Positions 6,546 through 54,605 of a stretch of 64,000 bases of DNA are shown in pieces. The position numbers were made by a program, and so were the translations under genes. The notes below the pieces were generated by a model. The model saw only the letters and a program-made list of their open reading frames with translations, was not told where the DNA came from and searched no databases. The stretch's first letter is position 1. The number at the start of each line of letters is the position of its first letter. The DNA lies in the IMG/VR virus record IMGVR_UViG_3300032287_004484, positions 124,001-188,000 of that record, one strand, 5' to 3'.

Positions 6546-6590
6546 ATTATTAATATATTATTAAAAAAAAAATAATGTTTATTTTTATAT

Positions 6591-6601
6591 CATAAATATA
6601 T
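6591..6601 (+). promoter_or_regulatory. Putative T4-type late promoter CATAAATATAT
   Basis: Same 11-mer at 9150-9160(-) and 23489-23499(-); CTAAATATAT at 23933-23942(-) and 48127-48136(+); resembles T4 TATAAATA. Confidence 0.5.
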
Positions 6602-6625
6602 TTTATAAAAAATAAGGAGAAAAAA

Positions 6626-6835
6626 ATGTCTCAATTTAATAAATATCTAAATATAGTGCAAGAGGCATCTTATGCTGATACAGAAAAAGCTAATGATCCG
6701 AAGCGTTTTGAAGATACTAGGAAGGCTTCTAAAGATAAGCGAGGATTTGTTAGAAACCCTAATAGTGAAACTAATTCTCAAAAAATAGAAAGATTAAAAA
6801 AAGAAGAAGAAGAAAAGAAAAAACAAAGAAGATAA
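6626..6835 (+). CDS. Small charged protein with N-terminal leader (putative internal head protein)
   Basis: Starts MSQFNKYLNIVQE; AAGGAG RBS; CATAAATATAT upstream. Confidence 0.75.
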   Translation: MSQFNKYLNIVQEASYADTEKANDPKRFEDTRKASKDKRGFVRNPNSETNSQKIERLKKEEEEKKKQRR

Positions 6836-6837
6836 TA

Positions 6838-22411: not shown

Positions 22412-22427
22412 AACCTATAAAATATTT

Positions 22428-22787: not shown

Positions 22788-22874
22788 ATATAAATATTTT
22801 TATATTTATACTATTATTTTTAATAAAAATAATAGTATTTAATATCTTTTTTTAAAGCTTTTGATAAATTATCT

Positions 22875-23468: not shown

Positions 23469-23527
23469 TTTTTTTATTTACCTCTTAAATATATTTATGT
23501 TATATTTTTTTTTCAATTTAGCAAATT

Positions 23528-23929: not shown

Positions 23930-24036
23930 ACTATATATTTAGTTGATAAAATAATTAATTGTGATTTATTTTAAAAATTTTTTGTGTATATTTATGTTTA
24001 TTATTATTAAAAATAAAAATAGAGGTACAAATTAAT

Positions 24037-37886: not shown

Positions 37887-39863
37887 ATGAAATTTGTAAA
37901 TTTATCATCATTATTTAGAGATTCCTCAGAGACACAAAACTTATTATCCTTAATTGATTCTAAAGGTTTTGGAATAAATTCTACTGTTATAACAACATCT
38001 GGAAATATTAATAATCTTTCTACTGATGATATTAGTTCCATTAAATTAACACAAGCAACTACTTTAACGGGTTTAGCAAATGGTGTTGATGGAAAAATAG
38101 TAATTATACATAATGCAAGTCCTAGTAATTTAACAATAGCAAATAATTCTGGATCTTCTAGTTCAGGTAATAAAATTTATACTGGATCTACATCAGATTT
38201 AACTTTATTACCTAATTCTTCTGTTTTATTACAATATGATAGCGATTCAACCATTTGGAGAGTTATTGGGATAAGTAATTCTCATAATGAATTAACAGGA
38301 AAGCAAGGTGGTGATGGTACTAATTTTTATCATTCTAATCAGCCAATAAACACTAATAGTAATGTTTCTTTTAATAATTTGACAGTTGTTAGTGGAGTCA
38401 ACGCGACTGGAAGTATTAAACTTAATAATATTACTTATCCTAGTACTGATGGAATTAGTGGACAAGCACTAATAACTAATGGATCCGGAACTTTATCTTT
38501 TACTAATGTTTCTCAAGTACATAATGATCTTACCTCAATTCAAGGTGGATCAGTTGGAAATTATTATCACTCTAATCAACCTATTAATACGACAAGTAAT
38601 GTTAGATTTAATAATTTAACGGTTGTTAGTGGAGTAAACGCAACTGGAAGTATTAAACTTAATAATATTACTTATCCAACTTCTGATGGAACCAGTGGAC
38701 AAGCTTTAGCAACTGATGGTAATGGTAATTTATATTTTACAACAGCAGGCGCTGGAACTGTTTTAGATACTTATATCACTAGTAAAGCAGTACAAATAAG
38801 CAATAATTCTACAAGTTCAGTTAATGCCCTATTTAGTGAAGTTGTATCTGGAATATATACTTTTTGGGTTAGTACTGACCCGAGAATTAAAGGTACTTTC
38901 TATTTAAATCAAAATGATATTAGCAATTCTGTGTTAGAAACAATATCTTCATCTGTATCAGGAAAACAAGATAATGCTAATTGTTTAAATGTTTACATTT
39001 CAAGTGGAAACATTATATTTCAAAATAAATTAGGTTCACAAGTAGTTGTAGCAGTAAGAAGAGAAACAAGTCCTTCTCATACTGGAGGTGGATCAGCTAT
39101 CAGTTCTGTTGCTTCTCACGCTGATTTAACAAATCTTCAAGGTGGAGATGGACAAGATTATTTTCATTCTAATCAACCTATAAATACAACTAGCACAGTA
39201 ACTTTTGCTGGAATTAATGTTCCATTAATTGAAAGTAGTGCTAGTGGAACATTGTCAAATGTAAGCACTAATAATGTAGGAGCCTTTAGATTTACTTGTG
39301 AATCTAGTACAGCGATAACTGGATTTGCTAATGGTAGTAATGGAAAATTATTATATCTTCATAACGCTAGTGCTGTAAATGTTACTTTTAAAAATAATTC
39401 AACATCATCATTATTAGCCAATAGGATTATAACTGGAAATAATGGCGATTTGATTTTAGGACCAGATAAATCGATCACTTTACAATATGATTCTTTTTCA
39501 TCTAAATGGAGAGTTTTAGGAGGAAGTGGAGGAAATAGTGGACAAAATCCTGAAACTCTTAATTTATCCAACACTAATTCAACAATTGATTTTTCAAATT
39601 ATTCTACTACTTCATTTAGAATAAAAAATCCAGCACAAATGACATTTACTAATGGAGTTAATGGAACATGGTATACATTAGCAATAGTTAGTGATGGATC
39701 TTATTCTTTCACATCTGAAACTAGATTTCCTCTTAATAACGCTCAACCAGTTCCATCTTCTGGAACTGTCGACATGTATAGTTTACATTGTATTGATACA
39801 GTTAGTGGAACCCGATATTTAGCAACATTTGCATACGATTATTCAGGAGTTATTTTACCATGA
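37887..39863 (+). CDS. Tail fibre protein
   Basis: Two shared adaptor-like domains, three His-QP repeats, DPRIKGT domain. Confidence 0.85.
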   Translation: MKFVNLSSLFRDSSETQNLLSLIDSKGFGINSTVITTSGNINNLSTDDISSIKLTQATTLTGLANGVDGKIVIIHNASPSNLTIANNSGSSSSGNKIYTGSTSDLTLLPNSSVLLQYDSDSTIWRVIGISNSHNELTGKQGGDGTNFYHSNQPINTNSNVSFNNLTVVSGVNATGSIKLNNITYPSTDGISGQALITNGSGTLSFTNVSQVHNDLTSIQGGSVGNYYHSNQPINTTSNVRFNNLTVVSGVNATGSIKLNNITYPTSDGTSGQALATDGNGNLYFTTAGAGTVLDTYITSKAVQISNNSTSSVNALFSEVVSGIYTFWVSTDPRIKGTFYLNQNDISNSVLETISSSVSGKQDNANCLNVYISSGNIIFQNKLGSQVVVAVRRETSPSHTGGGSAISSVASHADLTNLQGGDGQDYFHSNQPINTTSTVTFAGINVPLIESSASGTLSNVSTNNVGAFRFTCESSTAITGFANGSNGKLLYLHNASAVNVTFKNNSTSSLLANRIITGNNGDLILGPDKSITLQYDSFSSKWRVLGGSGGNSGQNPETLNLSNTNSTIDFSNYSTTSFRIKNPAQMTFTNGVNGTWYTLAIVSDGSYSFTSETRFPLNNAQPVPSSGTVDMYSLHCIDTVSGTRYLATFAYDYSGVILP

Positions 39864-41233
39864 TGGCGATGTTACCACCTATAAAGGAATTACAATCAGC
39901 TGCTTTACAAGATTTAAATTTAACTGATGGGATCCTACCTACTGGAGTATATAGACGAGTAACAGGAACATATACTAGTGTTTCTGATAATAATACTGAA
40001 ATTATTTGTTTAGATTTTAATGCTACAGTTTGCGGGACTGGCGCTAGTCTTAATGATTCTTATACTGCTCAAGCAACAATATATCAACCAATAATTAATC
40101 ACGACTCTTCTGGTATTACTATGTTAAAAGGTAATAATGGTTCACTTGGCGGAACTGGTGGAGGTGGTGGCGGTACTTTTGGTGGAGGAAGTACAGCTGG
40201 TGGCACTGGAGGTTCGGGTGGCAGTGGCGGACAAGGATTATCTGGTGGTGATGGTGCAGCAGGTGGTGGTGGCGCAAGTGGAGCAAGTGGGGGAAGCGCA
40301 GTACTATCTTTAGCAGGAGCTAATGGCTCTTCTGGTAGTTCAGGCGGAACTGGTGGAGCTGGAGGTATATTAAATTGTGTTTCTTCAGGCGGAGCAGGTG
40401 GAAGTGGAGGAGGCGGAGGCGGAGGAGCTTCGTTTTTATCTACTCCAGGTGTTCCTGGAGGTGCAGGCGCTAGTGGAAATCCTGGTGCTGGAAATGGAGC
40501 TCCTGGTGCTGCTAGTTCTGATCCTTGTAGTGGTGCTGTTTATCCTGGTGGTTCAGGAGGATCTGGCAATGCTTCTGGAAGTATCAATGGAAATTCTACA
40601 GCTGGAGGCGCAGGAGGCAGCGGTTCTTTAGTTCCTGGTGGAACTGGTAATACTGGTAATAATGGAGGCACTTGTGGTGATATTTTAACTGGTGGTGGTG
40701 GTGGAGGTGGAGCAGGTGGTCCTGGATTATCAGGAGTAGCTTTACCTAGTGGAGTATCTGGTGGTAATGGTGGTACAGGCGGAAATGGTGGTACAGGTGG
40801 TAAACCAAGCAAAAGTCTTTTTATTTATTCTTATAATTCAATAAGTGGTTCTATTTTATCACCTACAATCTCAGGTGCTTCTGGTTTAACGGGATCAGCT
40901 GGTTCTCTTGGATCATCAGTAACTTTAGGATTAAATACTGTAACTTCTGGTAACGGTAGTCCTGGAGGAAATGGAGGAAATGGTTCTAGTGGAGCTAATT
41001 CATATATATCTATTGTAAGCAGAAATACTAATAATATAAATTTAAATATCTGTAGTCCAATTCAAGGATCTAATGGTGATGGAAGTACTGGAAATGGAGG
41101 AGCTGGAGCATTAAGTATTTCTTCTAATGGATCAAATGGATTTACTGGAATAGGTGGAGCAGGTGGAGCAGCTCTTGCTAAAATACCTGCAAGAATTAAA
41201 AATACAAGTTGTGGCTCAATAATTAATATATAA
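39860..41233 (+). CDS. Glycine-rich (polyglycine II-like) fibre/adhesin protein
   Basis: Long GGxGGxGG tracts with scattered Cys; ATGA-coupled to the fibre gene. Confidence 0.75.
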   Translation: MMAMLPPIKELQSAALQDLNLTDGILPTGVYRRVTGTYTSVSDNNTEIICLDFNATVCGTGASLNDSYTAQATIYQPIINHDSSGITMLKGNNGSLGGTGGGGGGTFGGGSTAGGTGGSGGSGGQGLSGGDGAAGGGGASGASGGSAVLSLAGANGSSGSSGGTGGAGGILNCVSSGGAGGSGGGGGGGASFLSTPGVPGGAGASGNPGAGNGAPGAASSDPCSGAVYPGGSGGSGNASGSINGNSTAGGAGGSGSLVPGGTGNTGNNGGTCGDILTGGGGGGGAGGPGLSGVALPSGVSGGNGGTGGNGGTGGKPSKSLFIYSYNSISGSILSPTISGASGLTGSAGSLGSSVTLGLNTVTSGNGSPGGNGGNGSSGANSYISIVSRNTNNINLNICSPIQGSNGDGSTGNGGAGALSISSNGSNGFTGIGGAGGAALAKIPARIKNTSCGSIINI

Positions 41234-41245
41234 AAGGAAATAAAA

Positions 41246-42094
41246 ATGGAATTTACTCAAGCATATATATATAAAATTTTTGTATTTGATTCAAATACTG
41301 GTGAATTATTGAAAACAGAAGATTATTCTAATTTTCCAGATGTTCAAGAAGAAATTATAAAACATAATACTGATAATCAAGATAATCGTTGGAATTTATA
41401 TGTTGGAACAGAATATCCACCTAAAGGTGTAAAATTTGATATAACTATTAAACAATTTGTTGAAAAAACACTTTCTGAAAAATATGCTGATGGAGAAATT
41501 CAAATTTCTGATGAATTTAAGATAGTTAACGATTCATTAGTAAGATTAACTAAAAAAGAATTATATGAAAAAGGACTTATAAAATTAGAATATGACGAAA
41601 AAATAGATGAATTTGATCAAATAGTTAAACTTACTAAAAAAGAAATGTATGAACTTAATAAAATTACTAAATATCAAGTTTTTGATTACTTTATTCAAGA
41701 ATTAAATTTAAAAATAGAAACTAAATTAAAAAATTATTATAATTATCCTATGCAAGAAATAGGAACTTGGTCTTTAAAAAAAGAACAATCAGTCAAATGG
41801 TTAGAATTAACTAATCAAAATAAAATAGATGTTATTAATAATTCAATATCAATATATTATTTACTTTTTTCTGAATCTAATATTTTAGATACTGATAATG
41901 AATCTGATAAAATATTAAAAATTGATATATTATCTAATAAAATAATAAATAAGTATAAAGATTTAGAAACAGTTTACGGCAATATGTTTTTATTAAGAAG
42001 TCAAACTAAAAAACAATTAGAAGATATTTTAAATACTGAAAATAGTAATGTATTTCAAAAAATGGAAGAAGTTTTTAATAATATTAAAACATGA
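41246..42094 (+). CDS. Putative fibre assembly chaperone
   Basis: Acidic/helical, YPMQEIGTW motif, follows a fibre gene; AAGGA RBS. Confidence 0.55.
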   Translation: MEFTQAYIYKIFVFDSNTGELLKTEDYSNFPDVQEEIIKHNTDNQDNRWNLYVGTEYPPKGVKFDITIKQFVEKTLSEKYADGEIQISDEFKIVNDSLVRLTKKELYEKGLIKLEYDEKIDEFDQIVKLTKKEMYELNKITKYQVFDYFIQELNLKIETKLKNYYNYPMQEIGTWSLKKEQSVKWLELTNQNKIDVINNSISIYYLLFSESNILDTDNESDKILKIDILSNKIINKYKDLETVYGNMFLLRSQTKKQLEDILNTENSNVFQKMEEVFNNIKT

Positions 42095-42897
42095 TTATTA
42101 CTTTAACAGTTTGTTATAATAATTTCACTGTAATAGAAAAAAGTATTGATAGATATTATGAATTATGTTATTATAAACCTGATATTCATTTTATTTTAGA
42201 TAATGAATATCCTTTAAATAAAGATAGACTTAAAGAAACACTAAAAAAAATATCTCATAAATATGATTGTCTAATTTTAGAACCTAATAAAAATTTAGGA
42301 ATTAAAAATGGTACAAATTGGGCATTAGATCAAATATCGTTAAGTGATAATGATAAAATAATTATATATGATTCTAATGCTTATCCTATTACTAAACACT
42401 TTGATAAAGCATTAATAGATGTTTTAGAAAATAATGAAGATATTGTCGGAGTTTGTTTAACAGGTGGATCTTCATATACGAATAATTTAGAAAAGTTATA
42501 CGATAAATATTCTAAGCATTATTATTTTAGTGAAAATAATTTTAATATGGGTTCATCAATAGGTGTTTTTAATTATTACATTCATAAACAATTAAAATAT
42601 GATATTGATCTTTATAATAATTATTATGGAGATGCTATAAATTTACCTGATTCAAAATTAAAAAAATTACTTAAAAAAATAGATAAAAAAATGATTTTTT
42701 TATCTGATTATAATGAAAATTTAAAATTTTATTTTAATCAAGAAGATAAAGAATATATAAACTATAAAATTATTGCGCAAATTAATTCTTTAAATGATTT
42801 TAATCTAGAAAAATACCTTTTAAATAAGAATAAATATAATAAAATATCTCTTATAAATTACAAAATAAAAAAAATAAATGAGGTATTAAATTTTTGA
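42091..42897 (+). CDS. Putative GT-A glycosyltransferase (paralog of 44609-45424)
   Basis: TVCYN, LDNEYP, KNLGI, YDSN, FDKALID. Confidence 0.6.
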   Translation: MIITLTVCYNNFTVIEKSIDRYYELCYYKPDIHFILDNEYPLNKDRLKETLKKISHKYDCLILEPNKNLGIKNGTNWALDQISLSDNDKIIIYDSNAYPITKHFDKALIDVLENNEDIVGVCLTGGSSYTNNLEKLYDKYSKHYYFSENNFNMGSSIGVFNYYIHKQLKYDIDLYNNYYGDAINLPDSKLKKLLKKIDKKMIFLSDYNENLKFYFNQEDKEYINYKIIAQINSLNDFNLEKYLLNKNKYNKISLINYKIKKINEVLNF

Positions 42898-43523
42898 AAA
42901 AGGTTGTTATTTTTGGGTTTAGTGGTTTAACTAAAGGTTTTATTGTTAATAATATAGATTATCTTTTAAAAGGTAATATATCTTATGATATAGAATGTAT
43001 TTATATTGATAAGGAATATATAAAAGAAACATCTTTTGAAGGAATACCTATATTAAGTGATATTAATAAATATAAAGGTTATAGTTGTCTTATATTGACT
43101 TATCATCATGATTTAAGAAAAAAATGGATAAAAATTGCTGATTCATTAGAAATGGAGCATATAAGTATAATACATAAAGATAATTATATTGCTGAAAATG
43201 TTAAAATAGGTAAAGGTTGTTTTATAGGTCAGAATAATATAATTGAAAGTGGTGTCATCATAGGTGATTATTTTATTGCTGGATATAATAATAGAATAGG
43301 TCATGATAGTATTATAGGTGATTTTTGTCATATTTATGTTAGTGCTAATATAGGTGGGTATAATAAAATAAAAGATAATACTTCAATATGTTCTTCATCC
43401 TGTACTAAAGAGTATATAAGTATTGGTGATAATTCTATTATTGGTTTAGGTGCAGTTTTATTTAAAGATCTTAATGATAATTGTACAGCAATAGGAAATC
43501 CAGCAAGAGTAATTAAAAAATGA
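42894..43523 (+). CDS. NeuD/PglD-family sugar acetyltransferase
   Basis: Hexapeptide repeats, IGHD, AIGNPAR. Confidence 0.88.
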   Translation: MKKVVIFGFSGLTKGFIVNNIDYLLKGNISYDIECIYIDKEYIKETSFEGIPILSDINKYKGYSCLILTYHHDLRKKWIKIADSLEMEHISIIHKDNYIAENVKIGKGCFIGQNNIIESGVIIGDYFIAGYNNRIGHDSIIGDFCHIYVSANIGGYNKIKDNTSICSSSCTKEYISIGDNSIIGLGAVLFKDLNDNCTAIGNPARVIKK

Positions 43524-44059
43524 TAAAAATACATAAAGATATAGAAAAGAATATTTTTGAAGACTCACTACTTTTTATTTTAGATAATTATGATACTATA
43601 AAAAAGGATCTCTTAAATGTTCCTAAAAAATGTTATTCAGCATTTTATCAAATTCAAAATGTAAGTGATTATGATTCTAATTGGACTTTTTACCCTTTAA
43701 TATATAAAAAAAGAATTTTAGATTTTGAAAGACTAGCAACATTTACTACTCAATTATTAAATGATATAGGGGTTATTAATGCTGGTTTTTCCTTAATTTC
43801 ACCAAAATCAAAAACATCTTTACATAAAGATAATACTCCATATACATATCGTTCACATCTAGGTTTAATAGTTCCAAAAAATAATAGTTTTTTATTAGAT
43901 GGAGAAGATTTTACTGTTAAAGAAAAAGAAATCACTTTATTTTCAACTGAATTAGAACATATAGCAATAAATGATAGTGATGAGGATAGGTTTATACTTT
44001 TATTAGATTTTTTAAGACCTAATATATCTATTAACAAATTATTTTTAAAAAATGTTTAA
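43520..44059 (+). CDS. Aspartyl/asparaginyl beta-hydroxylase-family 2OG-Fe(II) oxygenase
   Basis: AGFSLISP, LHKD, RSHLGLIVP, EHIAIN, RFILLLDF. Confidence 0.85.
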   Translation: MIKIHKDIEKNIFEDSLLFILDNYDTIKKDLLNVPKKCYSAFYQIQNVSDYDSNWTFYPLIYKKRILDFERLATFTTQLLNDIGVINAGFSLISPKSKTSLHKDNTPYTYRSHLGLIVPKNNSFLLDGEDFTVKEKEITLFSTELEHIAINDSDEDRFILLLDFLRPNISINKLFLKNV

Positions 44060-44612
44060 CCAAGAATTAGAAAAATTATTAAATGTAGATATTAAATTAA
44101 ATGCTGAGTTTTATAATGATATTATAGATTCGGAATTATCAATAATATATCACGGTGAAAGATTAGCAAGTATTCTATATAAAAGAAGTGGTTTATTAAA
44201 ATTAAGTAAAATTGAATCAGTACACGCAAAAAAAATAAAAAAAATTATAAAAAAAATACACCCTATTGAAAAAGATTTTTTTAAGTTTTATAAATCAGTA
44301 TTAAAATCGAGGGATTTAAAAAAATATTCTCTTTTAATTGATGATTTAGAACAATATGCTATATATAGGTATAATACATTAATTAAAGTATTAAATGATA
44401 AAATAATAATTAATACACTAAAAGATATATTAAGAGATGAAGCAGATCATTCAAATGATAATATAAAAATTACATATAAAAATAAATTTGAAGGATATGA
44501 AAATTATTATTTATATAATAAGTATATTGATTTTTTAAATATTGATTATGATCAATTTAAAAAAATGATGTGGAATTGTGAGTTTTATAAACAACTAAGA
44601 GGACATAAATGA
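44052..44612 (+). CDS. Ferritin-like di-iron protein
   Basis: Two ExxH motifs (ESVH, DEADH), each preceded by a Glu-bearing helix (GERLA, LEQYA). Confidence 0.65.
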   Translation: MFNQELEKLLNVDIKLNAEFYNDIIDSELSIIYHGERLASILYKRSGLLKLSKIESVHAKKIKKIIKKIHPIEKDFFKFYKSVLKSRDLKKYSLLIDDLEQYAIYRYNTLIKVLNDKIIINTLKDILRDEADHSNDNIKITYKNKFEGYENYYLYNKYIDFLNIDYDQFKKMMWNCEFYKQLRGHK

Positions 44613-45424
44613 ATTTATTTTGTGGAACTATCGCTTATAATAAATTTTCAATATTAGAAAAATCAATTATTAATTTTATTGAAAAATCTAAAATTAAAAA
44701 TAAAACTCATTATGTAATTGATAATAATTATCCTTACGGTGATTCTAAAAAATTAGAAAAATTATGTAATGATTTTAATATTAAATATCTAAATTTTAAT
44801 AAAAATTTAGGGTTATTTAATTCTATGTATGAAATACAAAATTTATGTCAAGAACAAGATTATATTATTTTACACGAAGGAAATAATTTAATTTTAGATG
44901 ATGGATTTGATGAAGCATTAATTGATGCATATAATATTTTTGCTTATGATCATAAAGATGAAATTTATTATTTATGTTTAGAAAATGAATTTAGTAATGA
45001 ATTACAAAAATTACAAAAAAATAATATTAATTATTCTATAATACAAGATAAAAAATTGATTGGTTTTCCTTATTCTGGAACTAATATTTGTAAAAAAGAA
45101 AAATTAAAAGTTTTTTTATCTAATTATAATAATATTTATTTTGATGACCCCTATTTAAATTCAAATATAAAAAAAGATGCTTATATACTTAGAGATTATA
45201 AAGAAATATCACATTATTTTCTTAAAGAAGAAGATATAGAATATAAAATGTATAAAATGATAACTGTTTTTTTAAAATATTCAAAATCTTTTGATGAATT
45301 TTTAAAATTATATAATGAAAAAACTGAATATGTTTATATGATGATTAATAAAATAGATAAAAAAGTATTGAATTATATAGGGTATATTCCAGAAAGTCCT
45401 ATTATAAGGAATAATCATGAGTGA
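44609..45424 (+). CDS. Putative GT-A glycosyltransferase (paralog of 42091-42897)
   Basis: TIAYN, IDNNYP, KNLGL, FDEALID. Confidence 0.6.
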   Translation: MNLFCGTIAYNKFSILEKSIINFIEKSKIKNKTHYVIDNNYPYGDSKKLEKLCNDFNIKYLNFNKNLGLFNSMYEIQNLCQEQDYIILHEGNNLILDDGFDEALIDAYNIFAYDHKDEIYYLCLENEFSNELQKLQKNNINYSIIQDKKLIGFPYSGTNICKKEKLKVFLSNYNNIYFDDPYLNSNIKKDAYILRDYKEISHYFLKEEDIEYKMYKMITVFLKYSKSFDEFLKLYNEKTEYVYMMINKIDKKVLNYIGYIPESPIIRNNHE

Positions 45425-45998
45425 AATAAAAACATATCTTAATCAAAATATTGTTTCTTTATACGAAGATAAATTAAAATATTTACAAAAAAATATTAAT
45501 GTTTTTAAACAGGAATTATCTGATATACCTTTAGATAAATATGAAAACTTATTATTTATGAAAGATGTTGTAGATGATGATTATAAATGGAAAGTATATG
45601 GGATAAGATATAAATATAAAAACATTGATTTTGGAGATTATGCTCCAAAATCTGAAAGAATTTTAAATGAAATTAATTGTGTTAATGGTGGTTTTAGTTT
45701 ATTTTTACCAAATACAGAAACAACTTTACATTCTGGAACTACTCCTTACACTTATAGAAGTCATCTTGGATTAGATGTACCAGAAAATTGCGGTTTTATT
45801 TGTAATGATAATGATATCAGTATTAAAAATGGCGATATAAATTTTTTTGATGCTACTGATAAACATCAAGCTTGGAATAAATCTCAAAAAAATAGAATTA
45901 TATTATTAGTTGATTTTTTAAAACCAAATATTGATAAAAACAATATAATAAGAGGAACTAAGCAGCAAACTAATATTAAAACATATAAGAATAATTAA
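45417..45998 (+). CDS. Aspartyl/asparaginyl beta-hydroxylase-family 2OG-Fe(II) oxygenase
   Basis: GGFSLFLP, LHSG, RSHLGLDVP, FFD..KHQAWN, RIILLVDF. Confidence 0.85.
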   Translation: MSEIKTYLNQNIVSLYEDKLKYLQKNINVFKQELSDIPLDKYENLLFMKDVVDDDYKWKVYGIRYKYKNIDFGDYAPKSERILNEINCVNGGFSLFLPNTETTLHSGTTPYTYRSHLGLDVPENCGFICNDNDISIKNGDINFFDATDKHQAWNKSQKNRIILLVDFLKPNIDKNNIIRGTKQQTNIKTYKNN

Positions 45999-45999
45999 A

Positions 46000-47115
46000 A
46001 TGATCAATATACATCAACCGAAAATAGATTTATTTGATAAATTTGAAATACTTAAAACTTTATCAACAAATTGGATAGGTAAAGGTAAAAAAGTAGAAGA
46101 ATTTGAAAAAAACTTACAAGATTATCTTCAATTAAAAAATATCACCACAGTTACTTCTGGTACACAAGCTCTATATGAAGTTTTTAGATTATTAAAATCT
46201 AAAACTCAAAAAAAAGAAATTATAGTTTCATCACTATCTTTTATTGGAGTTTTAAGTTCGTTAAAAATAAATGATTTTGATTTTGTCTATGCTGACATAG
46301 ATAAAAGTCATTTAAGTTTATCATTAAAATCAATTAATCAAAAAATAACTGAAAATACAGCAGCTGTTGTGATACAACATTATGGCGGTAGACCAAATCA
46401 TGAAATAGAAAAAATAGCAAAATCTTTAAAACAAAAAAATATTTATTTAATTGAAGATTGTGCAACAGTTTTCGGAGGAACTATAAATGATATTCATCTT
46501 GGTAGTTATAGTGACTTCGCAATTTGGTCTTTTGATTCCGTAAAAATAATTACTACCTTAGATGGTGGAGCAATTTATTGTAAAAATAGCGATGATCTAC
46601 AAAAAATAAAAGAAAATATACATTTTGGATTAGTTGATTCACCTACCTCTTATAGTGCTTTTCAAAAGAAAAATGAATGGTGGGAAATAAATCCTAAATC
46701 ATATGGAACTCGTAATGTATTAAACGATGTTACTGCTTCACTTGGAATCTCTCAATTAAAAAAAATAAAAAAATTTATAAAATGTCAACAAGATGTATGG
46801 GATTTTTATTTAAATAATATAAAAAACAAAAAAATATCTTTTCCAATAGAATCGTCACCACATATTAAAGAATCTTATTTCTTTTTTTGGATTTTATCGC
46901 CAGAAAGGGATCAATTAGCTCAATTTTTAAAAAAAAATGAAATCTTTAGCACTTTTAGATATTATCCTTTACATAAAACTGAACTATATCATAAAGAAAA
47001 TGTTTTTTTACCAAATACTGATTTTATGTATCAAAGATTATTATGTCTACCTTGTCATAAAAGTTTAATAATAAAAGATTTAAAATATATAATAAATTTA
47101 ATAAATAAATTTTAA
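46000..47115 (+). CDS. DegT/DnrJ/EryC1/StrS sugar aminotransferase
   Basis: SGTQAL, HYGG, IEDCA, SFDSVKIITTLDGG, LCLP. Confidence 0.92.
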   Translation: MINIHQPKIDLFDKFEILKTLSTNWIGKGKKVEEFEKNLQDYLQLKNITTVTSGTQALYEVFRLLKSKTQKKEIIVSSLSFIGVLSSLKINDFDFVYADIDKSHLSLSLKSINQKITENTAAVVIQHYGGRPNHEIEKIAKSLKQKNIYLIEDCATVFGGTINDIHLGSYSDFAIWSFDSVKIITTLDGGAIYCKNSDDLQKIKENIHFGLVDSPTSYSAFQKKNEWWEINPKSYGTRNVLNDVTASLGISQLKKIKKFIKCQQDVWDFYLNNIKNKKISFPIESSPHIKESYFFFWILSPERDQLAQFLKKNEIFSTFRYYPLHKTELYHKENVFLPNTDFMYQRLLCLPCHKSLIIKDLKYIINLINKF

Positions 47116-47148
47116 AAGGCTAATAAAAGTTATTACATAGTTTAAATA

Positions 47149-48057
47149 ATGAATAAAAATATATACATACAAATAACTGGTGGAGTTGGTAAACATGTAG
47201 CCTTTACTTGTCTTTTACCCTTACTTAAAAATAAATATGAAAATATATACATATCCTGTATATATGAAGATATATTTAAAGGAAATCCTTATGTAAAAGA
47301 AGTAAATCCTAAAGTAGATAAAACTTTTTATAAAAATATTATTCTCAACGATAAAACAAAAATAGTTTTAAGTGATCCATATGATTCTGAACTATTTTTA
47401 AAAAAGAAAATTCACATGTTAGAAGCTTGGGGAAATTTATGTGAAATAGAAATAAATAACCCTATGAATTTAAAAACAGAACTTTACATGACAGAACGTG
47501 AAAAATTTACTGTAGATAAAGTAATAAATGAATTGAGAATAAAAACTAAAGATAAATTTATTATGATACAGTTAAATGGAGGACAAAGCCCTCATAACTT
47601 TGATATGAATAATGAAAAGGAATTTACATTTTTTAATGAAGAATCAAAAAGATTTTATCCTTTTGATTATTATATAGAACTTATCAAAAAATTAAAACAA
47701 AATTATCCAGAACATGCTATAATTAGATATGGTCTTATGAATGAAACAATACCAAATGAAATAAGTAATTTAATATTAACTATTCAACCAGCAATTCTTT
47801 ATAAAAATTATTATTGGATTTCTCAATACGCTAAACATGTAATATGTATAGATTCATCCTTACAACACATGACAGCAGGCATAAAACCTTCCGTAGTTAT
47901 TTGGGGAAATACAAAATCAGAACATTTTGGATACAATATTCATAAAAACTTACAAGAAAATAATGAGGACACGACGTCTTACTGTAGACCACTAGGAGAA
48001 AATAATCCCAACATTAAGTTTCCTTCTCCAAACAAAATAATGGAAAATTTAATATAG
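47149..48057 (+). CDS. GT9-like (GT-B) glycosyltransferase
   Basis: GGVGKHV, IDSSLQH, SVVIWGNT, FGY. Confidence 0.75.
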   Translation: MNKNIYIQITGGVGKHVAFTCLLPLLKNKYENIYISCIYEDIFKGNPYVKEVNPKVDKTFYKNIILNDKTKIVLSDPYDSELFLKKKIHMLEAWGNLCEIEINNPMNLKTELYMTEREKFTVDKVINELRIKTKDKFIMIQLNGGQSPHNFDMNNEKEFTFFNEESKRFYPFDYYIELIKKLKQNYPEHAIIRYGLMNETIPNEISNLILTIQPAILYKNYYWISQYAKHVICIDSSLQHMTAGIKPSVVIWGNTKSEHFGYNIHKNLQENNEDTTSYCRPLGENNPNIKFPSPNKIMENLI

Positions 48058-48156: not shown

Positions 48157-49737
48157 ATGAAATATATTAATTTATCATCTTTAGTTAGAAATTCAAATGA
48201 AAACGATGACATATTATCGTTATCAGCCAAAAAAGGATTCGCACTAGATTTTACAATAGTAAATACATCTGGTACTCTTAACAATTATTCAATTTCAGAA
48301 GAATCTTCTTTTAAATTTACAGCAGCTACTAATATCACTGGATTTAGTGGAGGATTTAATGGTAAATTTCTATATATTTATAATGGAAATAATTCGTCTG
48401 TTTTAATTTTAAATAATAACTCTTTATCATCTTTATCTCAAAATAGAATTTTAACTAATACTGGTGCTGATTTAGAAATTCCAATTAATGGCGGAGTAAT
48501 TTTACAATATGACAGTGATTCGTCCGTTTGGAGAATAATAGGTGGAAGCGGAAGTGGAGCATCAACTGGTGGAGGATCTAGCGTCACATTTACTTCTTCA
48601 ACTGATTTTTCTCTTGGTAGTCCAATATATTTTAGTTCTAGTGGTACGTGGCAATTAGCAAAAGCTGATTTAGATACGACTTCTGTTCAATATGTAATTT
48701 CTCAAAAAACAGGTTCTGGAAGTATTTCTTATACTGCTCTAGCAAGTGGAGAAATAACTTTAACAACGGGACAATGGGATGTAGTTACAAATGGTAGTGG
48801 CGGATTAACATCTGGGTCAATTTATTTCTTATCATCTTCTACAGCAGGTAAAATATCTACTAATGTTGGATTAATTTATGCACCAGTTCTAAGAGCTCTT
48901 TCATCAACTAAAGGATTCGTTTCTCTTTCAATTAATTCAATCGAAAGTGGAATGGGTGATACTTTTTATCGAGATACTGTTACAACAATTGCTAATACAT
49001 CAGCAATAACTCTAACTTATCCACCTGCTGGTAAAGCATATACTTGGTTATCTATTGATGGAGCAATTCAAAGTGGAATTGATTTTGACCTTGCAGGTAA
49101 TACCCTAACTTTAGGAGCAACAGTTCCATCTGGAACTTTAATAGATGTTTTATATGCTAGAGCAGTTCTATTAGCCGATTCTAATGCAATTAATAAAATG
49201 GTCGCATTTAGTGAAACAGTAACTGGATCAGCAAAAACAACTTTTAATTTACCTTCAGTTCCATCTGGATTAAATTCTTGTATAGTTTTTGTAGGAGGAT
49301 CTATTCAAGATACTTCTAAATTTAATCTTTCTGGTAATGTTTTATCTATGAGTGATCCAGTCCCAGTAGGAGTTCAATTAGTTGCTTATATTTTAAATTC
49401 AAGTGGAATTTCAAATAGCATAGATTCATATGTAAATCGTCAAGCATATAATTTATCAGCAAATGGAGCAATTTCAATATCAACTATATTTGGAAGTCAA
49501 AGTACTGGATTTTATAGATTTTTTGATATGAATGATCCTAGAATAAGTGGAACAATATCTTTAAAACATAATGGCATTGGCGTTGATCCAGATATAAGAG
49601 TTGATTCAAACAGTAGTTTAATTAGTATAACAATAAATACCGCAAGTAAAGTTAATATCTATATATCTTCTAACTTACTAACCTTTCAAAATTTAACATC
49701 TAACACTTTAGCTTTAAGGATTTATAGAGAGATATAA
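48157..49737 (+). CDS. Tail fibre/adaptor protein
   Basis: N-terminus homologous to 37887 protein, two IDGAIQ/VGGSIQ repeats, C-terminal DPRISGT domain. Confidence 0.8.
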   Translation: MKYINLSSLVRNSNENDDILSLSAKKGFALDFTIVNTSGTLNNYSISEESSFKFTAATNITGFSGGFNGKFLYIYNGNNSSVLILNNNSLSSLSQNRILTNTGADLEIPINGGVILQYDSDSSVWRIIGGSGSGASTGGGSSVTFTSSTDFSLGSPIYFSSSGTWQLAKADLDTTSVQYVISQKTGSGSISYTALASGEITLTTGQWDVVTNGSGGLTSGSIYFLSSSTAGKISTNVGLIYAPVLRALSSTKGFVSLSINSIESGMGDTFYRDTVTTIANTSAITLTYPPAGKAYTWLSIDGAIQSGIDFDLAGNTLTLGATVPSGTLIDVLYARAVLLADSNAINKMVAFSETVTGSAKTTFNLPSVPSGLNSCIVFVGGSIQDTSKFNLSGNVLSMSDPVPVGVQLVAYILNSSGISNSIDSYVNRQAYNLSANGAISISTIFGSQSTGFYRFFDMNDPRISGTISLKHNGIGVDPDIRVDSNSSLISITINTASKVNIYISSNLLTFQNLTSNTLALRIYREI

Positions 49738-49738
49738 A

Positions 49739-51565
49739 ATGCCAATAAATAAAATAGCATATCAAGTATTAGAAGAAAACCAACAAAATTATATCAATAT
49801 TCTTAGAAGTGGTCAATCAGTAAGTGATATAGGATGGACCACATATGCTGATTCAGCAGGAACTAATCCAGTCGATGGAATCGGTGGAAGCCCAAGTATT
49901 ACTTGGTCACAAAACACTTCTAGTCCTTTAAGTGGCGATTCTGACTTAAGATTAGTAAAAGATGCAGTTAATAGGCAAGGAAATGGAGTAAGTATTCCTT
50001 TCACTATTGCTAATAGACATTTAGGAAAAGTTCTTCAAATAACTTGTGATATGGAATTAATCTCTGGAACTTATGCTTCTGGAGATTTAAGAATAAGCAT
50101 AATACAAGACCCTACTGGAACTCCAGTTGTATTAGAACCTGTAGGAACGTCTCTTGAGTTAGGTATTGCAAATCAAAGAATAAGAGAAATTGCTACTTTT
50201 CAAAGTCATATCTCTATTACTTCTTATAGATTATGTATTCACGTAAGTAGTACAAGTGCAAACGCTTATACAGTAGATTTTGCTAATTTTAAAGTATGGG
50301 AACCAACTCAAAGTATAGGAAGTGTTATAACAGATTGGCAAAGTTATACACCTACAATAGTTGGGTGTGGTACAGTTTCTACTGTTGATTTTAGATGGAG
50401 AAGAGCTGGAAGTTCAATGGAGATATTCGGTTCATTTAGAACTGGTACTACAACAGCAGTTCCAATTCAAATTCCTTTGCCAAATGGTTTATTTCCAAAT
50501 TTACCAAATAGTGCTAATCAAACAAGAAATAGTGTTGGAATTGGGACAAGAGCGGAATATTCTTCAACCGTAAATTCTTATAATGTAATAGCTGATAATA
50601 GTTTAAATTATTTAACTTTTGGTTATTTGAATGCAGGTAGTTCATCTTATGACCCATTAGCAACTTTTAATTGTTCAAGTGTATTTAATACGAATGATGA
50701 TATACTTGTTCGTGCTGAAGTTCCAATAGCAGGTTGGGGTTCTAGTGTTGCAATGAGTTCTGATAGCGGAGATGGAAGAGTTATAAGTGCTATGGTTACA
50801 GGAAGTTTAAGTACTGGGGCAAATACTTCTACAAATTTAACTTGGAGTTCCCCTACTATACTTTATGATACTCATGGAGGTTTTAATGCTACTACTGGAT
50901 ATACTGCACCTGTTTCTGGTTATTATCAATTTACAGGTTATTTTAATACAGATAGCACAAGTGGGACTTATTGGAATGCTTGGGTATCGGGTTCAAATAG
51001 ACAAAGTTGTGGTGTATCTTTAAGCGGTTTTATTTTTGTTTCTGGTACAGTTTTATTATTGGCAGGGCAAAATTTAACATTTAGACCTGCTTCTGGTAGT
51101 GTAGCAAGCGTTAGTTCTGGAAATTATTTTACAATAAATAGAGTTTCAACCGGTAGTCAAGTTATTGCAACAAGTGAAACAGTTGCTTGTAGTGTTAATA
51201 AAACATCTGGAACTGCTAGTGCTTCAACAAGAATTGCATCTTGGAATACAAAAGATTTAGATACTCATGGAAGTTTTGATTTAACAAATGGAACTTTTAC
51301 AGTTCCAATGTCTGGAGTTTATTTAATAAATGCTTCTGCTCATACTTTTAATTTTACTTCTTATAATCAAGCAGGATTCACAATACGTTCTGGCACTACT
51401 GTTTTATCTACTTCAACGATGTACTTCACTTCTTCTTTTGAACCTGAGATAGGTACATCAGCTTTACGAAGATTTATAGCAGGTGATATAATTAGTTTAT
51501 ATGGTTATGGAAGTGGTTTTGCTTGCAATAATTTAATTATGAATATATCAAGGATAGGAATATGA
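49739..51565 (+). CDS. Receptor-binding protein with C1q/TNF-like C-terminal domains
   Basis: TDWQSYTP, YDTHGGF...YTAPVSGYY, DTHGSF...FTVPMSGVY. Confidence 0.75.
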   Translation: MPINKIAYQVLEENQQNYINILRSGQSVSDIGWTTYADSAGTNPVDGIGGSPSITWSQNTSSPLSGDSDLRLVKDAVNRQGNGVSIPFTIANRHLGKVLQITCDMELISGTYASGDLRISIIQDPTGTPVVLEPVGTSLELGIANQRIREIATFQSHISITSYRLCIHVSSTSANAYTVDFANFKVWEPTQSIGSVITDWQSYTPTIVGCGTVSTVDFRWRRAGSSMEIFGSFRTGTTTAVPIQIPLPNGLFPNLPNSANQTRNSVGIGTRAEYSSTVNSYNVIADNSLNYLTFGYLNAGSSSYDPLATFNCSSVFNTNDDILVRAEVPIAGWGSSVAMSSDSGDGRVISAMVTGSLSTGANTSTNLTWSSPTILYDTHGGFNATTGYTAPVSGYYQFTGYFNTDSTSGTYWNAWVSGSNRQSCGVSLSGFIFVSGTVLLLAGQNLTFRPASGSVASVSSGNYFTINRVSTGSQVIATSETVACSVNKTSGTASASTRIASWNTKDLDTHGSFDLTNGTFTVPMSGVYLINASAHTFNFTSYNQAGFTIRSGTTVLSTSTMYFTSSFEPEIGTSALRRFIAGDIISLYGYGSGFACNNLIMNISRIGI

Positions 51566-54604: not shown

Positions 54605-54605
54605 G

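What the first reader, a model, noticed from the sequence alone, without database searches (positions are those of the whole stretch)
39860..48057. Virion-tailoring cassette inside the fibre operon: polyglycine protein + 2 AspH-type hydroxylases + di-iron protein + amino-sugar enzymes + 3 GTs
Seen: a Gly-rich 457 aa protein and a chaperone-like ORF are followed by mostly overlapping genes in the order GT, acetyltransferase, hydroxylase, ferritin-like, GT paralog, hydroxylase paralog, DegT, GT9-like, after which fibre genes resume. Established: AspH-family enzymes hydroxylate Asp/Asn (LpxO hydroxylates lipid A), DegT plus NeuD/PglD make N-acyl amino sugars, and some ferritin-like di-iron enzymes are N-oxygenases or hydroxylases. 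Inference: a hydroxylate-then-glycosylate pathway, analogous to collagen modification, that decorates the fibre with a rare amino sugar for shielding or adhesion. The repeated GT+hydroxylase pairing suggests two matched writer sets.
Basis: partly seen in the sequence, partly recalled or inferred. Interest (0 to 1): 0.85.

Follow-up and report, generated by a model that had tools for sequence, protein, structure and literature searches.

The report
Fibre-tip glycosylation cassette in uncultured phages
A large uncultured phage carries, between two of its tail-fibre genes, a glycine-rich fibre-tip-like protein followed by enzymes that make an amino sugar, transfer sugars and add oxygen; the same arrangement recurs in at least seven related phage lineages, so it is probably a kit for chemically decorating the fibre, which has not been described for phages.

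Summary
Window 39860-48057 has ten tightly packed + strand genes: Gly-rich 457 aa protein, 282 aa chaperone-like protein, GT-A glycosyltransferase, PglD/VioB-like N-acetyltransferase, AspH-family oxygenase, di-iron ferritin-like protein, GT-A paralog, oxygenase paralog, DegT aminotransferase, weak GT9-like protein. It lies between paralogous fibre genes.

New here: the order fibre, Gly-rich protein, p282, GT-A, acetyltransferase, DegT recurs in at least seven uncultured-phage lineages, one beside T4 gp13-15. It is absent from isolated phages. That core is invariant. The oxygenases vary in kind and number: PF05118 0-3, di-iron 0-1, TauD, P4H-like. One relative adds APS kinase and a weak sulfotransferase-like gene.

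RmlA- and RmlB-like genes elsewhere in the window could supply the keto-sugar. No cassette protein has a membrane segment.

Best reading, about 0.5: a fibre-tip tailoring module that glycosylates the Gly-rich protein or neighbouring fibres with a 4-acetamido-4,6-dideoxyhexose. Oxygenases either create acceptor hydroxyls or modify the sugar.

Main rival: host-envelope remodelling. This is a new variant of virion glycosylation. Interest 0.62.

The parts
37887..39863 (+). Fibre paralog (658 aa) immediately upstream; its stop overlaps the start of the Gly-rich gene
   Evidence: Paralog of the 880, 1203 and 526 aa products. It has internal repeats and a Ser/Thr/Asn-rich composition. A homolog of this family precedes the Gly-rich gene in L003, L029, L031, L033 and L034.
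39860..41233 (+). Gly-rich 457 aa protein: about 90 aa N-terminal domain, then conserved GGxGG motifs separated by variable segments. Candidate fibre-tip adhesin and candidate substrate.
   Evidence: 36% Gly in the core. Homologs lie at the same position in L003, L023, L029, L031, L033 and L034, E 7e-22 to 5e-138. Alignment A5 shows conserved Gly motifs with indel-rich stretches between them. Language-model neighbours are phage GP38 adhesin clusters, score 0.85, a lead only. There is no Pfam or PDB sequence match. The AlphaFold model was unusable, pLDDT 34.
41246..42094 (+). 282 aa protein (p282), probable fibre assembly or chaperone protein
   Evidence: phrog_10358, function unknown, E 8e-12. 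Atlas neighbours score 0.91 with 178 shared features; named families among them are Caudo_TAP, Caudo_TAP_N, DUF4376 and YomQ_N. There are 29 homolog clusters. Every long contig examined has the GT-A gene directly after it. Shorter, distant 182 aa relatives lie among tail genes without the cassette.
42091..42897 (+). GTa: GT-A fold glycosyltransferase, a phage-specific family
   Evidence: AF2 pLDDT 82, pTM 0.82. Foldseek PDB hits are PcManGT, the LH3 GT domain, TarP, SpsA and ppGalNAcTs, E about 1e-6, TM about 0.5. Only 5 clusters exist in 5.8 billion proteins. It is present in every lineage.
42894..43523 (+). Left-handed beta-helix N-acetyltransferase of the NeuD/PglB/VioB/PglD type
   Evidence: TIGR03570, 133 bits, full length, below cut-off. 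PDB: WeeI 4m9c E 3.5e-16, PglB, VioB, PglD.
43520..44059 (+). HydA: small soluble AspH-family (PF05118) Fe(II)/2OG oxygenase
   Evidence: PF05118, E 6.6e-24. It aligns to the human AspH catalytic domain, with His102, His147 and Arg157 invariant in 12 phage homologs. LpxO and OlsC models score only 48 and 34 bits against cut-offs of 500 and 450. No membrane segment.
44052..44612 (+). Ferritin-like di-iron four-helix protein (186 aa)
   Evidence: Sub-threshold Rubrerythrin and Ferritin_2 hits. E36, E55xxH58, E100 and E130xxH133 are invariant in the window, L003, L007 and L034 at 35-40% identity. Atlas neighbours are ferritin, rubrerythrin, COQ7, MiaE and AurF-like.
44609..45424 (+). GTb: paralog of GTa
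   Evidence: 29% identity, E 5e-16. Orthologs in L003 and L007/L029. The L003 ortholog carries a weak PF00535 hit.
45417..45998 (+). HydB: second PF05118 oxygenase, next to DegT
   Evidence: PF05118, E 6.5e-23. 39% identical to HydA. A PF05118 gene directly precedes DegT in the window, L003, L007, L022 and L031.
46000..47115 (+). DegT/DnrJ/EryC1-family PLP sugar aminotransferase
   Evidence: PF01041, 217 bits. Best solved relative is TlmJ 5uid, E 1e-50, far ahead of PseC and others. Best NCBIfam model is PseC, 196 bits against a 423 cut-off.
47149..48057 (+). GT9-like (GT-B) putative glycosyltransferase; accessory, seen in this genome only
   Evidence: PF01075, E 0.004, and TIGR02193, E 5.8e-5, on the same C-terminal part. 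Absent from L003, where DegT is followed directly by the fibre gene. No PDB sequence hit.
48157..51565 (+). Next fibre paralog (526 aa) and a 608 aa protein with a C1q-like head domain
   Evidence: The 526 aa product shares its N-terminal domain with the 658 aa fibre. C1q domain, 25.5 bits, above cut-off.
5808..7836 (-). RmlA-like nucleotidyltransferase (5808-6545) and RmlB-like 4,6-dehydratase (6841-7836): probable supply of the NDP-4-keto-6-deoxyhexose that DegT needs
   Evidence: TIGR01207, 178 bits, and TIGR01181, 208 bits; both are best hits and both are below the equivalog cut-off. Pfam NTP_transferase and GDP_Man_Dehyd/Epimerase. The link to the cassette is an inference.

Best explanation
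This is a phage-encoded tailoring module for a tail-fibre tip.

The fibre gene at 37887 is followed by a Gly-rich protein, which probably caps or decorates that fibre. Next comes its probable assembly factor, p282.

The enzymes that follow are soluble and made from the same strand as the fibre genes.
- Sugar supply: DegT aminates an NDP-4-keto-6-deoxyhexose, probably made by the phage's own RmlA- and RmlB-like enzymes. The PglD/VioB-like enzyme N-acetylates the product, giving an NDP-4-acetamido-4,6-dideoxyhexose.
- Transfer: the GT-A enzymes GTa and GTb, and here a GT9-like enzyme, transfer this and perhaps other sugars onto the Gly-rich protein or the adjacent fibres.
- Oxygen: the PF05118 oxygenases and the di-iron protein add oxygen. 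They either act on side chains of the acceptor to create or alter attachment sites, or act on the sugar or its N-acyl group.

What is shown: the gene identities, the fold of GTa, the metal-site residues, and the conserved linkage with the Gly-rich gene.

What is inferred: the sugar's identity, the acceptor, the order of steps and the timing.

Because the oxygenase set differs between lineages while the sugar and GT core is constant, I take the oxygenases to be diversifiers of the decoration rather than an obligatory first step.
For: (1) Conserved linkage. The order fibre paralog, Gly-rich about 460-500 aa, p282, GTa, LbH, then DegT is found in the window, L003, L029+L007, L023, L031, L033 (contig ends after GTa) and L034. 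Protein identities fall to about 35-45%, and other genes are inserted or lost.

(2) Every long contig examined for a full-length p282 homolog has GTa directly after p282.

(3) All genes lie on one strand with overlapping stops and starts. No terminator-like or promoter-like signal exceeds chance inside the block.

(4) No cassette protein has a membrane segment, and there is no flippase, polymerase or priming transferase. A soluble acceptor therefore fits.

(5) The sugar pathway is coherent: RmlA- and RmlB-like genes in the window, a TlmJ/PseC-like aminotransferase, and a PglD/VioB-like acetyltransferase.

(6) In the same slot, relatives carry other protein-type oxygenases: P4H-like 2OG-FeII_Oxy_3 directly before the Gly-rich gene in L029 and after DegT in L034, and TauD in L023. 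L023 also has an APS kinase and a weak sulfotransferase-like gene. This matches the bacterial systems predicted to hydroxylate then sulfate co-encoded Gly-rich or tail-collar proteins (PMC2938197).

(7) Cellular PF05118 relatives found by the phage profile are fused to TPR, FKBP and sulfotransferase domains, which are protein-directed contexts.

(8) Virion glycosylation by GTs in structural operons is established in mycobacteriophages (Freeman 2023, as cited in PMC12619734).
Against: - There is no direct evidence that any virion protein is modified.
- Conserved synteny among related phages can persist without a direct enzyme-substrate relation.
- The virion location of the Gly-rich protein is unproven. 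It shows no sequence match to gp38 and the structure prediction failed.
- The nearest curated relatives of the hydroxylases are lipid acyl hydroxylases, LpxO and OlsC.
- GT9 relatives are mostly LPS heptosyltransferases.
- Published opinion reads jumbo-phage sugar clusters as host polysaccharide modifiers (PMC7824862).
- Expression timing is unknown. The T4 late-promoter motif is not enriched.
Confidence: 0.5

Rival explanations
1. Host-envelope remodelling. The cassette and the upstream sugar genes make an amino sugar that is added to host LPS, capsule or S-layer during infection. This would mask receptors and block superinfection. On this view the position among fibre genes is only a tolerated insertion site.
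For: - This is the standard reading of sugar clusters in jumbo and cyanophages (PMC7824862; PMC12801897).
- The hydroxylases score best against LpxO and OlsC among curated models.
- The GT9-like protein weakly resembles heptosyltransferase I.
- A separate sugar cluster of the usual type exists at 254-12497.
Against: - The LpxO and OlsC scores are a tenth of the cut-offs, and the phage proteins lack the membrane segments.
- There is no flippase, polymerase or lipid-carrier transferase.
- The GT9-like gene is missing in the closest relative.
- This view does not explain why the enzymes stay glued to the Gly-rich gene and p282 in seven lineages while their own composition changes.
- The genes sit on the same strand as late-type structural genes, with overlapping junctions.
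Confidence: 0.2
2. Sugar-only chemistry. The acceptor is the fibre, but the oxygenases never touch protein. They hydroxylate or oxidise the nucleotide sugar or its N-acyl group, so the module simply builds an unusual glycan that goes onto ordinary Ser/Thr.
For: - A PF05118 gene sits directly before DegT in five lineages.
- The Gly-rich core already has 61 Ser and 22 Thr, so no new hydroxyl is needed.
- LpxO and OlsC hydroxylate acyl groups.
- Oxygenase number and kind vary freely, as expected for glycan diversification.
Against: - No PF05118 enzyme acting on a nucleotide sugar is known to me.
- The P4H-like and TauD-type oxygenases in relatives, and the TPR and FKBP fusions of cellular relatives, point to amino-acid or protein substrates.
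Confidence: 0.2
3. The cassette acts on phage DNA (glycosyl hypermodification) or makes a small-molecule metabolite, and is unrelated to the fibres.
For: - Phages glycosylate DNA with diverse glycans (Pyle 2024, as cited in PMC12619734).
- The DegT's best solved relative, TlmJ, is from an antibiotic pathway.
- Cyanophages carry dioxygenase arrays proposed to make metabolites (PMC2938197).
Against: - There is no base-modifying enzyme, kinase, NRPS or PKS in or beside the cassette.
- The linkage is to the Gly-rich gene, p282 and the fibre genes, not to replication genes.
- PF05118 is not a nucleic-acid dioxygenase family.
Confidence: 0.05

Closest known systems
Mycobacteriophage virion glycosylation (Freeman et al. 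2023, Cell Host Microbe; cited in PMC12619734 and PMC12801897)
   Same: Phage-encoded glycosyltransferases sit in the structural gene block and decorate virion proteins.
   Different: There the targets are the capsid and tail-tube C-termini. No sugar-synthesis genes, oxygenases or Gly-rich partner are involved. Modification is demonstrated there and only inferred here.
Predicted bacterial systems that hydroxylate then sulfate co-encoded Gly-rich (collagen-like) or phage tail-collar proteins (Iyer et al. 2010, PMC2938197)
   Same: - A beta-hydroxylase-family 2OG oxygenase and an acetyltransferase are encoded with a Gly-rich protein or a tail-fibre-type protein.
- One relative of the cassette (L023) carries APS kinase and a weak sulfotransferase-like gene.
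- L022 has a Collar-domain gene downstream.
   Different: - Those systems are bacterial and built around sulfation.
- This one is in phage fibre operons and built around an amino-sugar pathway plus GT-A enzymes.
- Neither has been tested experimentally.
Mimivirus collagen modification (bifunctional lysyl hydroxylase/glycosyltransferase L230; glucosyltransferase R699; PMC9546862, PMC12279948) and, from my own knowledge, giant-virus fibril glycosylation with virus-made viosamine or bacillosamine
   Same: - The virus encodes both hydroxylase and GT for a Gly-rich structural protein.
- The virus encodes DegT-type and N-acetyltransferase steps for a 4-amino-4,6-dideoxy sugar.
- The GTa model resembles the LH3 GT domain among other GT-A folds.
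   Different: - The host is eukaryotic.
- The hydroxylase family is different (LH/P4H rather than PF05118).
- Those targets have true Gly-X-Y collagen repeats, which the Gly-rich protein here lacks.
- The LH3 resemblance is generic GT-A, TM about 0.5.
T2/S16-type gp38 tail-fibre adhesin with a polyglycine-II sandwich (Dunne et al. 2018, cited in PMC12801897)
   Same: - A Gly-rich protein is encoded directly after the distal fibre gene.
- Conserved Gly motifs are separated by variable segments.
- Language-model neighbours are GP38 clusters.
   Different: - There is no Pfam GP38 hit and no PDB sequence hit.
- It is nearly twice as long.
- gp38 is not known to be modified.
Bleomycin/tallysomycin tailoring (BlmE/BlmF in PMC11611020; beta-hydroxylases in PMC2938197; TlmJ structure 5uid)
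   Same: - A hydroxylase and a glycosyltransferase act together to attach sugar to a peptide backbone.
- TlmJ is by far the closest solved relative of the cassette's aminotransferase.
   Different: - The substrate there is a non-ribosomal peptide.
- The hydroxylases were not compared directly here.
Jumbo- and cyanophage polysaccharide gene clusters (Iyer et al. 2021, PMC7824862)
   Same: They hold NDP-sugar synthesis enzymes plus several GT families in large aquatic myoviruses. The window's 254-12497 cluster is of this type.
   Different: Those clusters are not tied to a Gly-rich fibre gene and are read as host-surface modifiers.

Membership tests
Aspartyl/asparaginyl beta-hydroxylase family (PF05118) | Pfam score above the gathering threshold | tested here: met
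   85.0 and 81.8 bits against 22.6
Aspartyl/asparaginyl beta-hydroxylase family (PF05118) | Two-His iron site and the 2OG-binding Arg of AspH | tested here: met
   His102, His147 and Arg157 are invariant in 12 homologs. In the 5apa alignment they align to AspH residues that I identify from memory as the iron-binding His and 2OG-binding Arg.
LpxO lipid A hydroxylase / OlsC ornithine-lipid hydroxylase | Equivalog score and membrane anchoring | tested here: not met
   48.5 and 41.4 bits against 500 for LpxO; 33.6 and 55.5 bits against 450 for OlsC. No hydrophobic segment, max KD19 1.23.
DegT/DnrJ/EryC1 sugar aminotransferases | Pfam score above threshold over the full length | tested here: met
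   217 bits, residues 16-368 of 371. The motif SFDSVK with the expected Lys is visible in the sequence.
PseC (UDP-4-amino-4,6-dideoxy-AltNAc transaminase) equivalog | NCBIfam equivalog cut-off | tested here: not met
   196 bits against 423.5. The sugar and nucleotide specificity therefore remain open.
NeuD/PglB/VioB sugar N-acetyltransferases | TIGR03570 cut-off; left-handed beta-helix with an N-terminal Rossmann-like domain | tested here: inconclusive
   133 bits against 160.8, but aligned end to end, 4-205 to 2-202. PDB best hits are WeeI, PglB, VioB and PglD.
GT-A fold glycosyltransferases (GT2-like) | Sequence membership in PF00535 | tested here: not met
   20 bits against 23.3 for GTa; none for GTb
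GT-A fold glycosyltransferases (GT2-like) | GT-A fold | tested here: met
   AF2 pLDDT 82. 183 Foldseek PDB matches at E <= 0.001, and the top 50 are GT-A enzymes or the related nucleotidyltransferases.
GT9 heptosyltransferases | Pfam or NCBIfam cut-off | tested here: not met
   16.8 bits against 22; 22.5 bits against 185. A resemblance only.
Ferritin-like di-iron carboxylate proteins | E, ExxH, E, ExxH ligand set on a four-helix bundle | tested here: met
   E36, E55, H58, E100, E130 and H133 are invariant in four lineages. Pfam scores are below cut-off, and the helical bundle is known only from the Atlas model, pTM 0.62.
gp38 tail-fibre adhesin (PF05268) | Sequence or structure match to gp38 and its PGII sandwich | tested here: not met
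   No Pfam hit at E <= 0.1. No PDB hit by sequence or profile. The model was unusable. Only Atlas feature neighbours support it.
Tail fibre assembly proteins (Caudo_TAP/DUF4376) | Pfam match | tested here: not met
   No Pfam hit. Atlas neighbours only. phrog_10358 has no known function.
Phage virion glycosylation systems | GT genes inside the structural gene block | tested here: met
   The cassette lies between paralogous fibre genes. In L007 it lies next to T4 gp13-15.
Phage virion glycosylation systems | Glycan attached to a virion protein | not testable with these tools
   Needs mass spectrometry of virions or of co-expressed proteins.

The most novel reading that the evidence does not exclude
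Phages of this clade write a combinatorial post-translational code on a polyglycine receptor-binding protein. Lineage-specific sets of oxygenases (AspH-type, di-iron, TauD, P4H-like) install hydroxyls on the fibre tip. These are then capped by a virus-made amino sugar, or by sulfate in some lineages. On this reading, host range or resistance to host defences evolves by swapping tailoring enzymes rather than by mutating the adhesin.
Probability: 0.22. Interest if true: 0.85.

Novelty: new variant of a known kind. Interest (0 to 1): 0.62.

Why it matters
Receptor-binding proteins decide which bacteria a phage can infect. They are normally thought to change only by mutation and domain swapping.

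A conserved module that chemically decorates the fibre tip with a virus-made amino sugar and with oxygenases would add a second, enzymatic layer to host recognition or virion protection. It would extend virion glycosylation from actinobacteriophages to large aquatic T4-like phages.

It would also give the first tractable test case for the idea, predicted in 2010 and still untested, that prokaryotic AspH-type hydroxylases modify Gly-rich and fibre proteins. The enzymes are small and soluble, so the test is simple.

Tried and rejected
1. Nucleotide searches of the cassette and of 24 kb of flank against isolated phages gave no match. tblastn of the Gly-rich protein and p282 also gave no match.

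2. tblastn of HydA against phages returned only distant LpxO-like genes, mostly bacterial contaminants or unrelated phages.

3. AlphaFold of the Gly-rich protein with a 4-row alignment gave pLDDT 34, so I ran no fold search on it.

4. A profile search of PDB for a gp38 relation returned only noise.

5. Pro-Gly (P4H-type) motif enrichment in the Gly-rich core: 8 observed against 5.1 expected. This is not convincing and I dropped it.

6. The one-to-one GT:hydroxylase pairing is not upheld across lineages.

7. The hydroxylase tree has only a moderately supported phage clade (89/95) and unresolved internal order, so it gives no statement on paired duplication.

8. The T4 late-promoter motif TATAAATA occurs 25 times against 33 expected. 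The sigma-70 and terminator scans were at or below chance.

9. Scans of metagenome contigs (twice) and genome contigs for p282 found nothing, so there is no host clue.

10. More distant viral PF05118 genes (L011-L021) lack the other cassette genes and are a different context.

11. Two small cellular PF05118 relatives (P0019, P0022) lay on contigs too short to give context.

12. The low G+C of the enzyme genes (18.5-21%) is matched elsewhere in the window, so I do not read it as foreign origin.

Full report
**Source and setting**

The window is positions 124001-188000 of IMGVR_UViG_3300032287_004484, a 290 kb viral contig. G+C is about 25%. It has no nucleotide match among 50,697 isolated phage records.

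From 28555 to 58159 almost every gene is on the + strand. The products of 31553 (880 aa), 34242 (1203 aa), 37887 (658 aa) and 48157 (526 aa) are mutually homologous, Ser/Thr/Asn-rich proteins. They give weak PHROG hits to tail-fibre and tail-collar families nearby. The 608 aa product at 49739 has a C1q-like head domain above the Pfam threshold. "Fibre operon" is therefore a fair description. The finding lies between two paralogous fibre genes.

**The observation**

Ten ORFs fill 39860-48057. Junctions are 4- or 8-nt overlaps or gaps of 1-33 nt.
- Two PF05118 oxygenases, 85 and 82 bits, 39% identical to each other.
- A DegT aminotransferase, 217 bits. Its closest solved relative by a wide margin is TlmJ, E 1e-50.
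- A hexapeptide acetyltransferase of the NeuD/PglB/VioB/PglD kind.
- Two "GT" genes that are paralogs. They have only a sub-threshold GT2 hit. An AlphaFold model of the first (pLDDT 82, pTM 0.82) matches GT-A glycosyltransferases throughout the top of a Foldseek PDB search.
- The "ferritin-like" protein, which is sub-threshold in Pfam. It has the full E / ExxH / E / ExxH ligand set, invariant in four lineages at 35-40% identity.
- The "GT9-like" call, which rests on two weak but concordant hits and is the least secure.

None of the ten proteins has a hydrophobic segment long enough to span a membrane.

**What the relatives show**

The hydroxylase and GT families are rare. There are nine and five 90%-identity clusters respectively among 5.8 billion proteins. 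Only four 50%-identity clusters score below E 1e-30 in an exhaustive profile search, before the general PF05118 family begins.

Contigs carrying these proteins, and contigs carrying homologs of the 282 aa protein (29 clusters), were fetched and compared with the window's proteins by phmmer. The gene orders are as follows.
- **L003-L005:** fibre, Gly-rich, p282, GTa, LbH, Hyd, Ferr, GTb, Hyd, DegT, fibre. This is the window's order without the GT9-like gene.
- **L029 + L007 (one lineage):** fibre, P4H-like oxygenase, Gly-rich, p282, Hyd, GTa, LbH, Ferr, GTb, Hyd, LbH, a 126 aa ORF, Hyd, DegT, a third GT-like protein, three minus-strand genes including an APS-kinase-like one, then T4 gp13, gp14 and gp15.
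- **L023:** Gly-rich, a 200 aa ORF, TauD, p282, GTa, Hyd, LbH, APS kinase (E 2e-22), a weak sulfotransferase-like ORF, a cytidylyltransferase-like ORF, DUF2061, DegT.
- **L031:** fibre, Gly-rich, p282, GTa, LbH, the third GT-like type, Hyd, DegT.
- **L033:** fibre, Gly-rich, p282, GTa, then the contig ends.
- **L034:** fibre, Gly-rich, p282, GTa, LbH, Ferr, DegT, P4H-like oxygenase. It has no PF05118 gene.
- **L022:** Hyd, DegT, fibre paralog, Collar-domain protein.

The invariant set is therefore the Gly-rich protein, p282, one GT-A, the acetyltransferase and DegT. Oxygenases are always present but differ in family and number.

Identities between lineages fall to 35-45%. G+C ranges from 26% to 34%. 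These are not near-identical copies of one genome.

Neither the Gly-rich protein nor p282 has any tblastn match in isolated phages.

**The two non-enzymes**

*The Gly-rich protein.* It has a conserved N-terminal domain of about 90 aa. After that come conserved GGxGG motifs and short beta-like segments, interrupted by indel-rich stretches.
- Its protein-language-model neighbours are overwhelmingly phage GP38 tail-fibre adhesin clusters (score 0.85, which the tool rates as a lead only).
- In T2/S16-type phages, gp38 is a polyglycine-rich adhesin encoded directly after the distal fibre gene (Dunne 2018, cited in PMC12801897). The gene position here is the same.
- Membership is not shown. There is no Pfam GP38 hit and no PDB sequence or profile hit. 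The AlphaFold model was unusable.

*The 282 aa protein (p282).* Its neighbours score 0.91 with 178 shared features. The named families among them are tail-fibre assembly proteins: Caudo_TAP, DUF4376 and YomQ_N.
- Shorter, distant relatives sit among tail genes of other phages without any cassette.
- I read p282 as an assembly factor, not as part of the chemistry.

**The chemistry**

DegT enzymes aminate NDP-keto-sugars, and PglD/VioB-type enzymes N-acetylate the resulting 4-amino sugars. This is established family knowledge. The best structural relatives here are WeeI, PglB, VioB, PglD, TlmJ and PseC.

The keto-sugar supply is not in the cassette. The window does carry an RmlA-like nucleotidyltransferase and an RmlB-like 4,6-dehydratase on the minus strand at 5808-7836. 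They sit inside a second sugar cluster with another SDR, a GT2, a beta-phosphoglucomutase-like HAD fused to a nucleotidyltransferase, a methyltransferase and a PlsC-like acyltransferase.

The most economical pathway is hexose-1-P, then NDP-hexose, then NDP-4-keto-6-deoxyhexose, then the 4-amino sugar, then the 4-acetamido-4,6-dideoxyhexose, then GT-A transfer. All equivalog scores are below cut-off, so the nucleotide and the stereochemistry are open.

The PF05118 proteins keep the two His and the Arg that align with residues of human AspH. I identify these from memory as its iron and 2OG ligands. Among curated models they score best against LpxO and OlsC, but at a tenth of the cut-offs and without membrane anchors. 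They are therefore not those enzymes.

**Which acceptor?**

The evidence for a virion target is contextual, but it comes from several directions.
- The persistent linkage with the Gly-rich gene, p282 and a fibre paralog.
- One strand with overlapping junctions, and no internal signals above chance.
- Soluble enzymes, with no lipid-carrier machinery.
- The company kept in relatives: P4H-like and TauD-type oxygenases, APS kinase and a sulfotransferase-like gene.

That last pattern is what Iyer et al. (PMC2938197) described in bacteria. They found beta-hydroxylase-family dioxygenases with sulfotransferases, PAPS synthetases and acetyltransferases. These were co-encoded with secreted Gly-rich peptides or T4 short-tail-fibre-type collar proteins. 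They predicted these proteins to be hydroxylated and then sulfated.

Cellular PF05118 proteins recovered by the phage profile include fusions to sulfotransferase, TPR and FKBP domains. These are protein-directed contexts.

Precedents for the general idea exist.
- Mycobacteriophage capsid and tail-tube glycosylation (Freeman 2023).
- Mimivirus collagen hydroxylation and glycosylation (PMC9546862, PMC12279948).
- Bleomycin-type tailoring, where a hydroxylase and a GT act together (PMC11611020).

Nothing shows that hydroxylation precedes glycosylation, or that it is on protein.
- The Gly-rich core already holds 61 Ser and 22 Thr.
- A PF05118 gene most often abuts DegT.
- One lineage lacks PF05118 altogether.
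- GT-like to oxygenase counts are 3:3, 2:3, 3:5, 2:1, 1:2 and 1:2 across lineages, so "two matched writer sets" is not a general rule.
- The hydroxylase tree is too poorly resolved to test paired duplication.

I therefore keep two sub-models open: oxygenases acting on the acceptor, or on the sugar and its acyl group. In both I treat the oxygenases as diversifiers.

**Rivals**

Host-envelope remodelling is the standard interpretation of jumbo-phage sugar clusters (PMC7824862) and cannot be excluded. It fits the upstream cluster at 254-12497 well. It does not explain the fixed partnership with the Gly-rich gene and p282. DNA hypermodification or metabolite synthesis has little to support it.

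**Verdict**

This is a conserved fibre-tip tailoring module, confined so far to uncultured, probably T4-like, low-G+C phages. It has an invariant amino-sugar and GT-A core and a variable oxygenase periphery.

It is a new variant of virion glycosylation, not a new category. In the literature I could search it is undescribed. It can be tested directly with soluble recombinant proteins.

Noticed in passing
window 254-12497, mostly minus strand: A second sugar-nucleotide cluster: SDR epimerase/dehydratase (254-1246), RmlA-like (5808-6545), RmlB-like (6841-7836), PlsC-like acyltransferase (8419-9144), GT2 (9789-10424), a beta-phosphoglucomutase-like HAD fused to a nucleotidyltransferase (10426-11799), and a SAM methyltransferase (11796-12497). 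It may feed the cassette, or act on the host surface.
   Followed up: partly
window 53583-56655: Three tandem pairs, each a small fibre-like protein (225, 238 and 210 aa; the last two are clear paralogs) followed by a 110-115 aa ORF. The last two small ORFs share a C-terminal EYPxIxxQLDILYHQGYDGWKK motif. They look like swappable receptor-binding protein plus chaperone cassettes.
   Followed up: no
L023:6031-7407: Inside a relative's cassette: APS kinase (E 2e-22), a weak Sulfotransfer_2-like ORF (E 0.009) and a cytidylyltransferase-like ORF. This suggests a sulfation branch alongside glycosylation. L007 has an APS-kinase-like gene on the minus strand beside its cassette.
   Followed up: partly
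L029:723-1370 and L034:13979-14581: P4H-like 2OG-FeII_Oxy_3 oxygenases, placed directly before the Gly-rich gene (L029) or after DegT (L034). L034 has no PF05118 gene.
   Followed up: partly
L007:6673-7491 and L031:12330-13094: A third cassette-associated family. The two are 47% identical over their first 100 aa, with an hhhhDxD-like motif and a weak GT2 hit. They are not significantly related to GTa/GTb by hhalign.
   Followed up: partly
L031:3766-5013: A second, shorter Gly-rich protein (416 aa, 32% Gly, E 6e-13 to the window's) upstream in the same fibre region. It is not followed by enzymes.
   Followed up: no
window 49739-51565: The 608 aa fibre-region protein has a C1q/TNF-like domain above the Pfam threshold, 25.5 bits. 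It is followed by a 180 aa ORF with weak PHROG hits of unknown function.
   Followed up: no
window 25123-26979 (-) and 59392-60213 (+): A ribonucleotide reductase whose nearest isolated-phage relatives are only 47-49% identical: Vibrio, Microcystis and Oceanospirillum phages. Also a weak Fpg/Nei-like DNA glycosylase.
   Followed up: no
window 20001-24000 and 42001-46000: G+C drops to 18.5-21% in two stretches, against about 30% in the fibre genes. In the cassette this tracks the Lys/Asn/Ile-rich enzymes. I do not take it as a sign of recent transfer.
   Followed up: no
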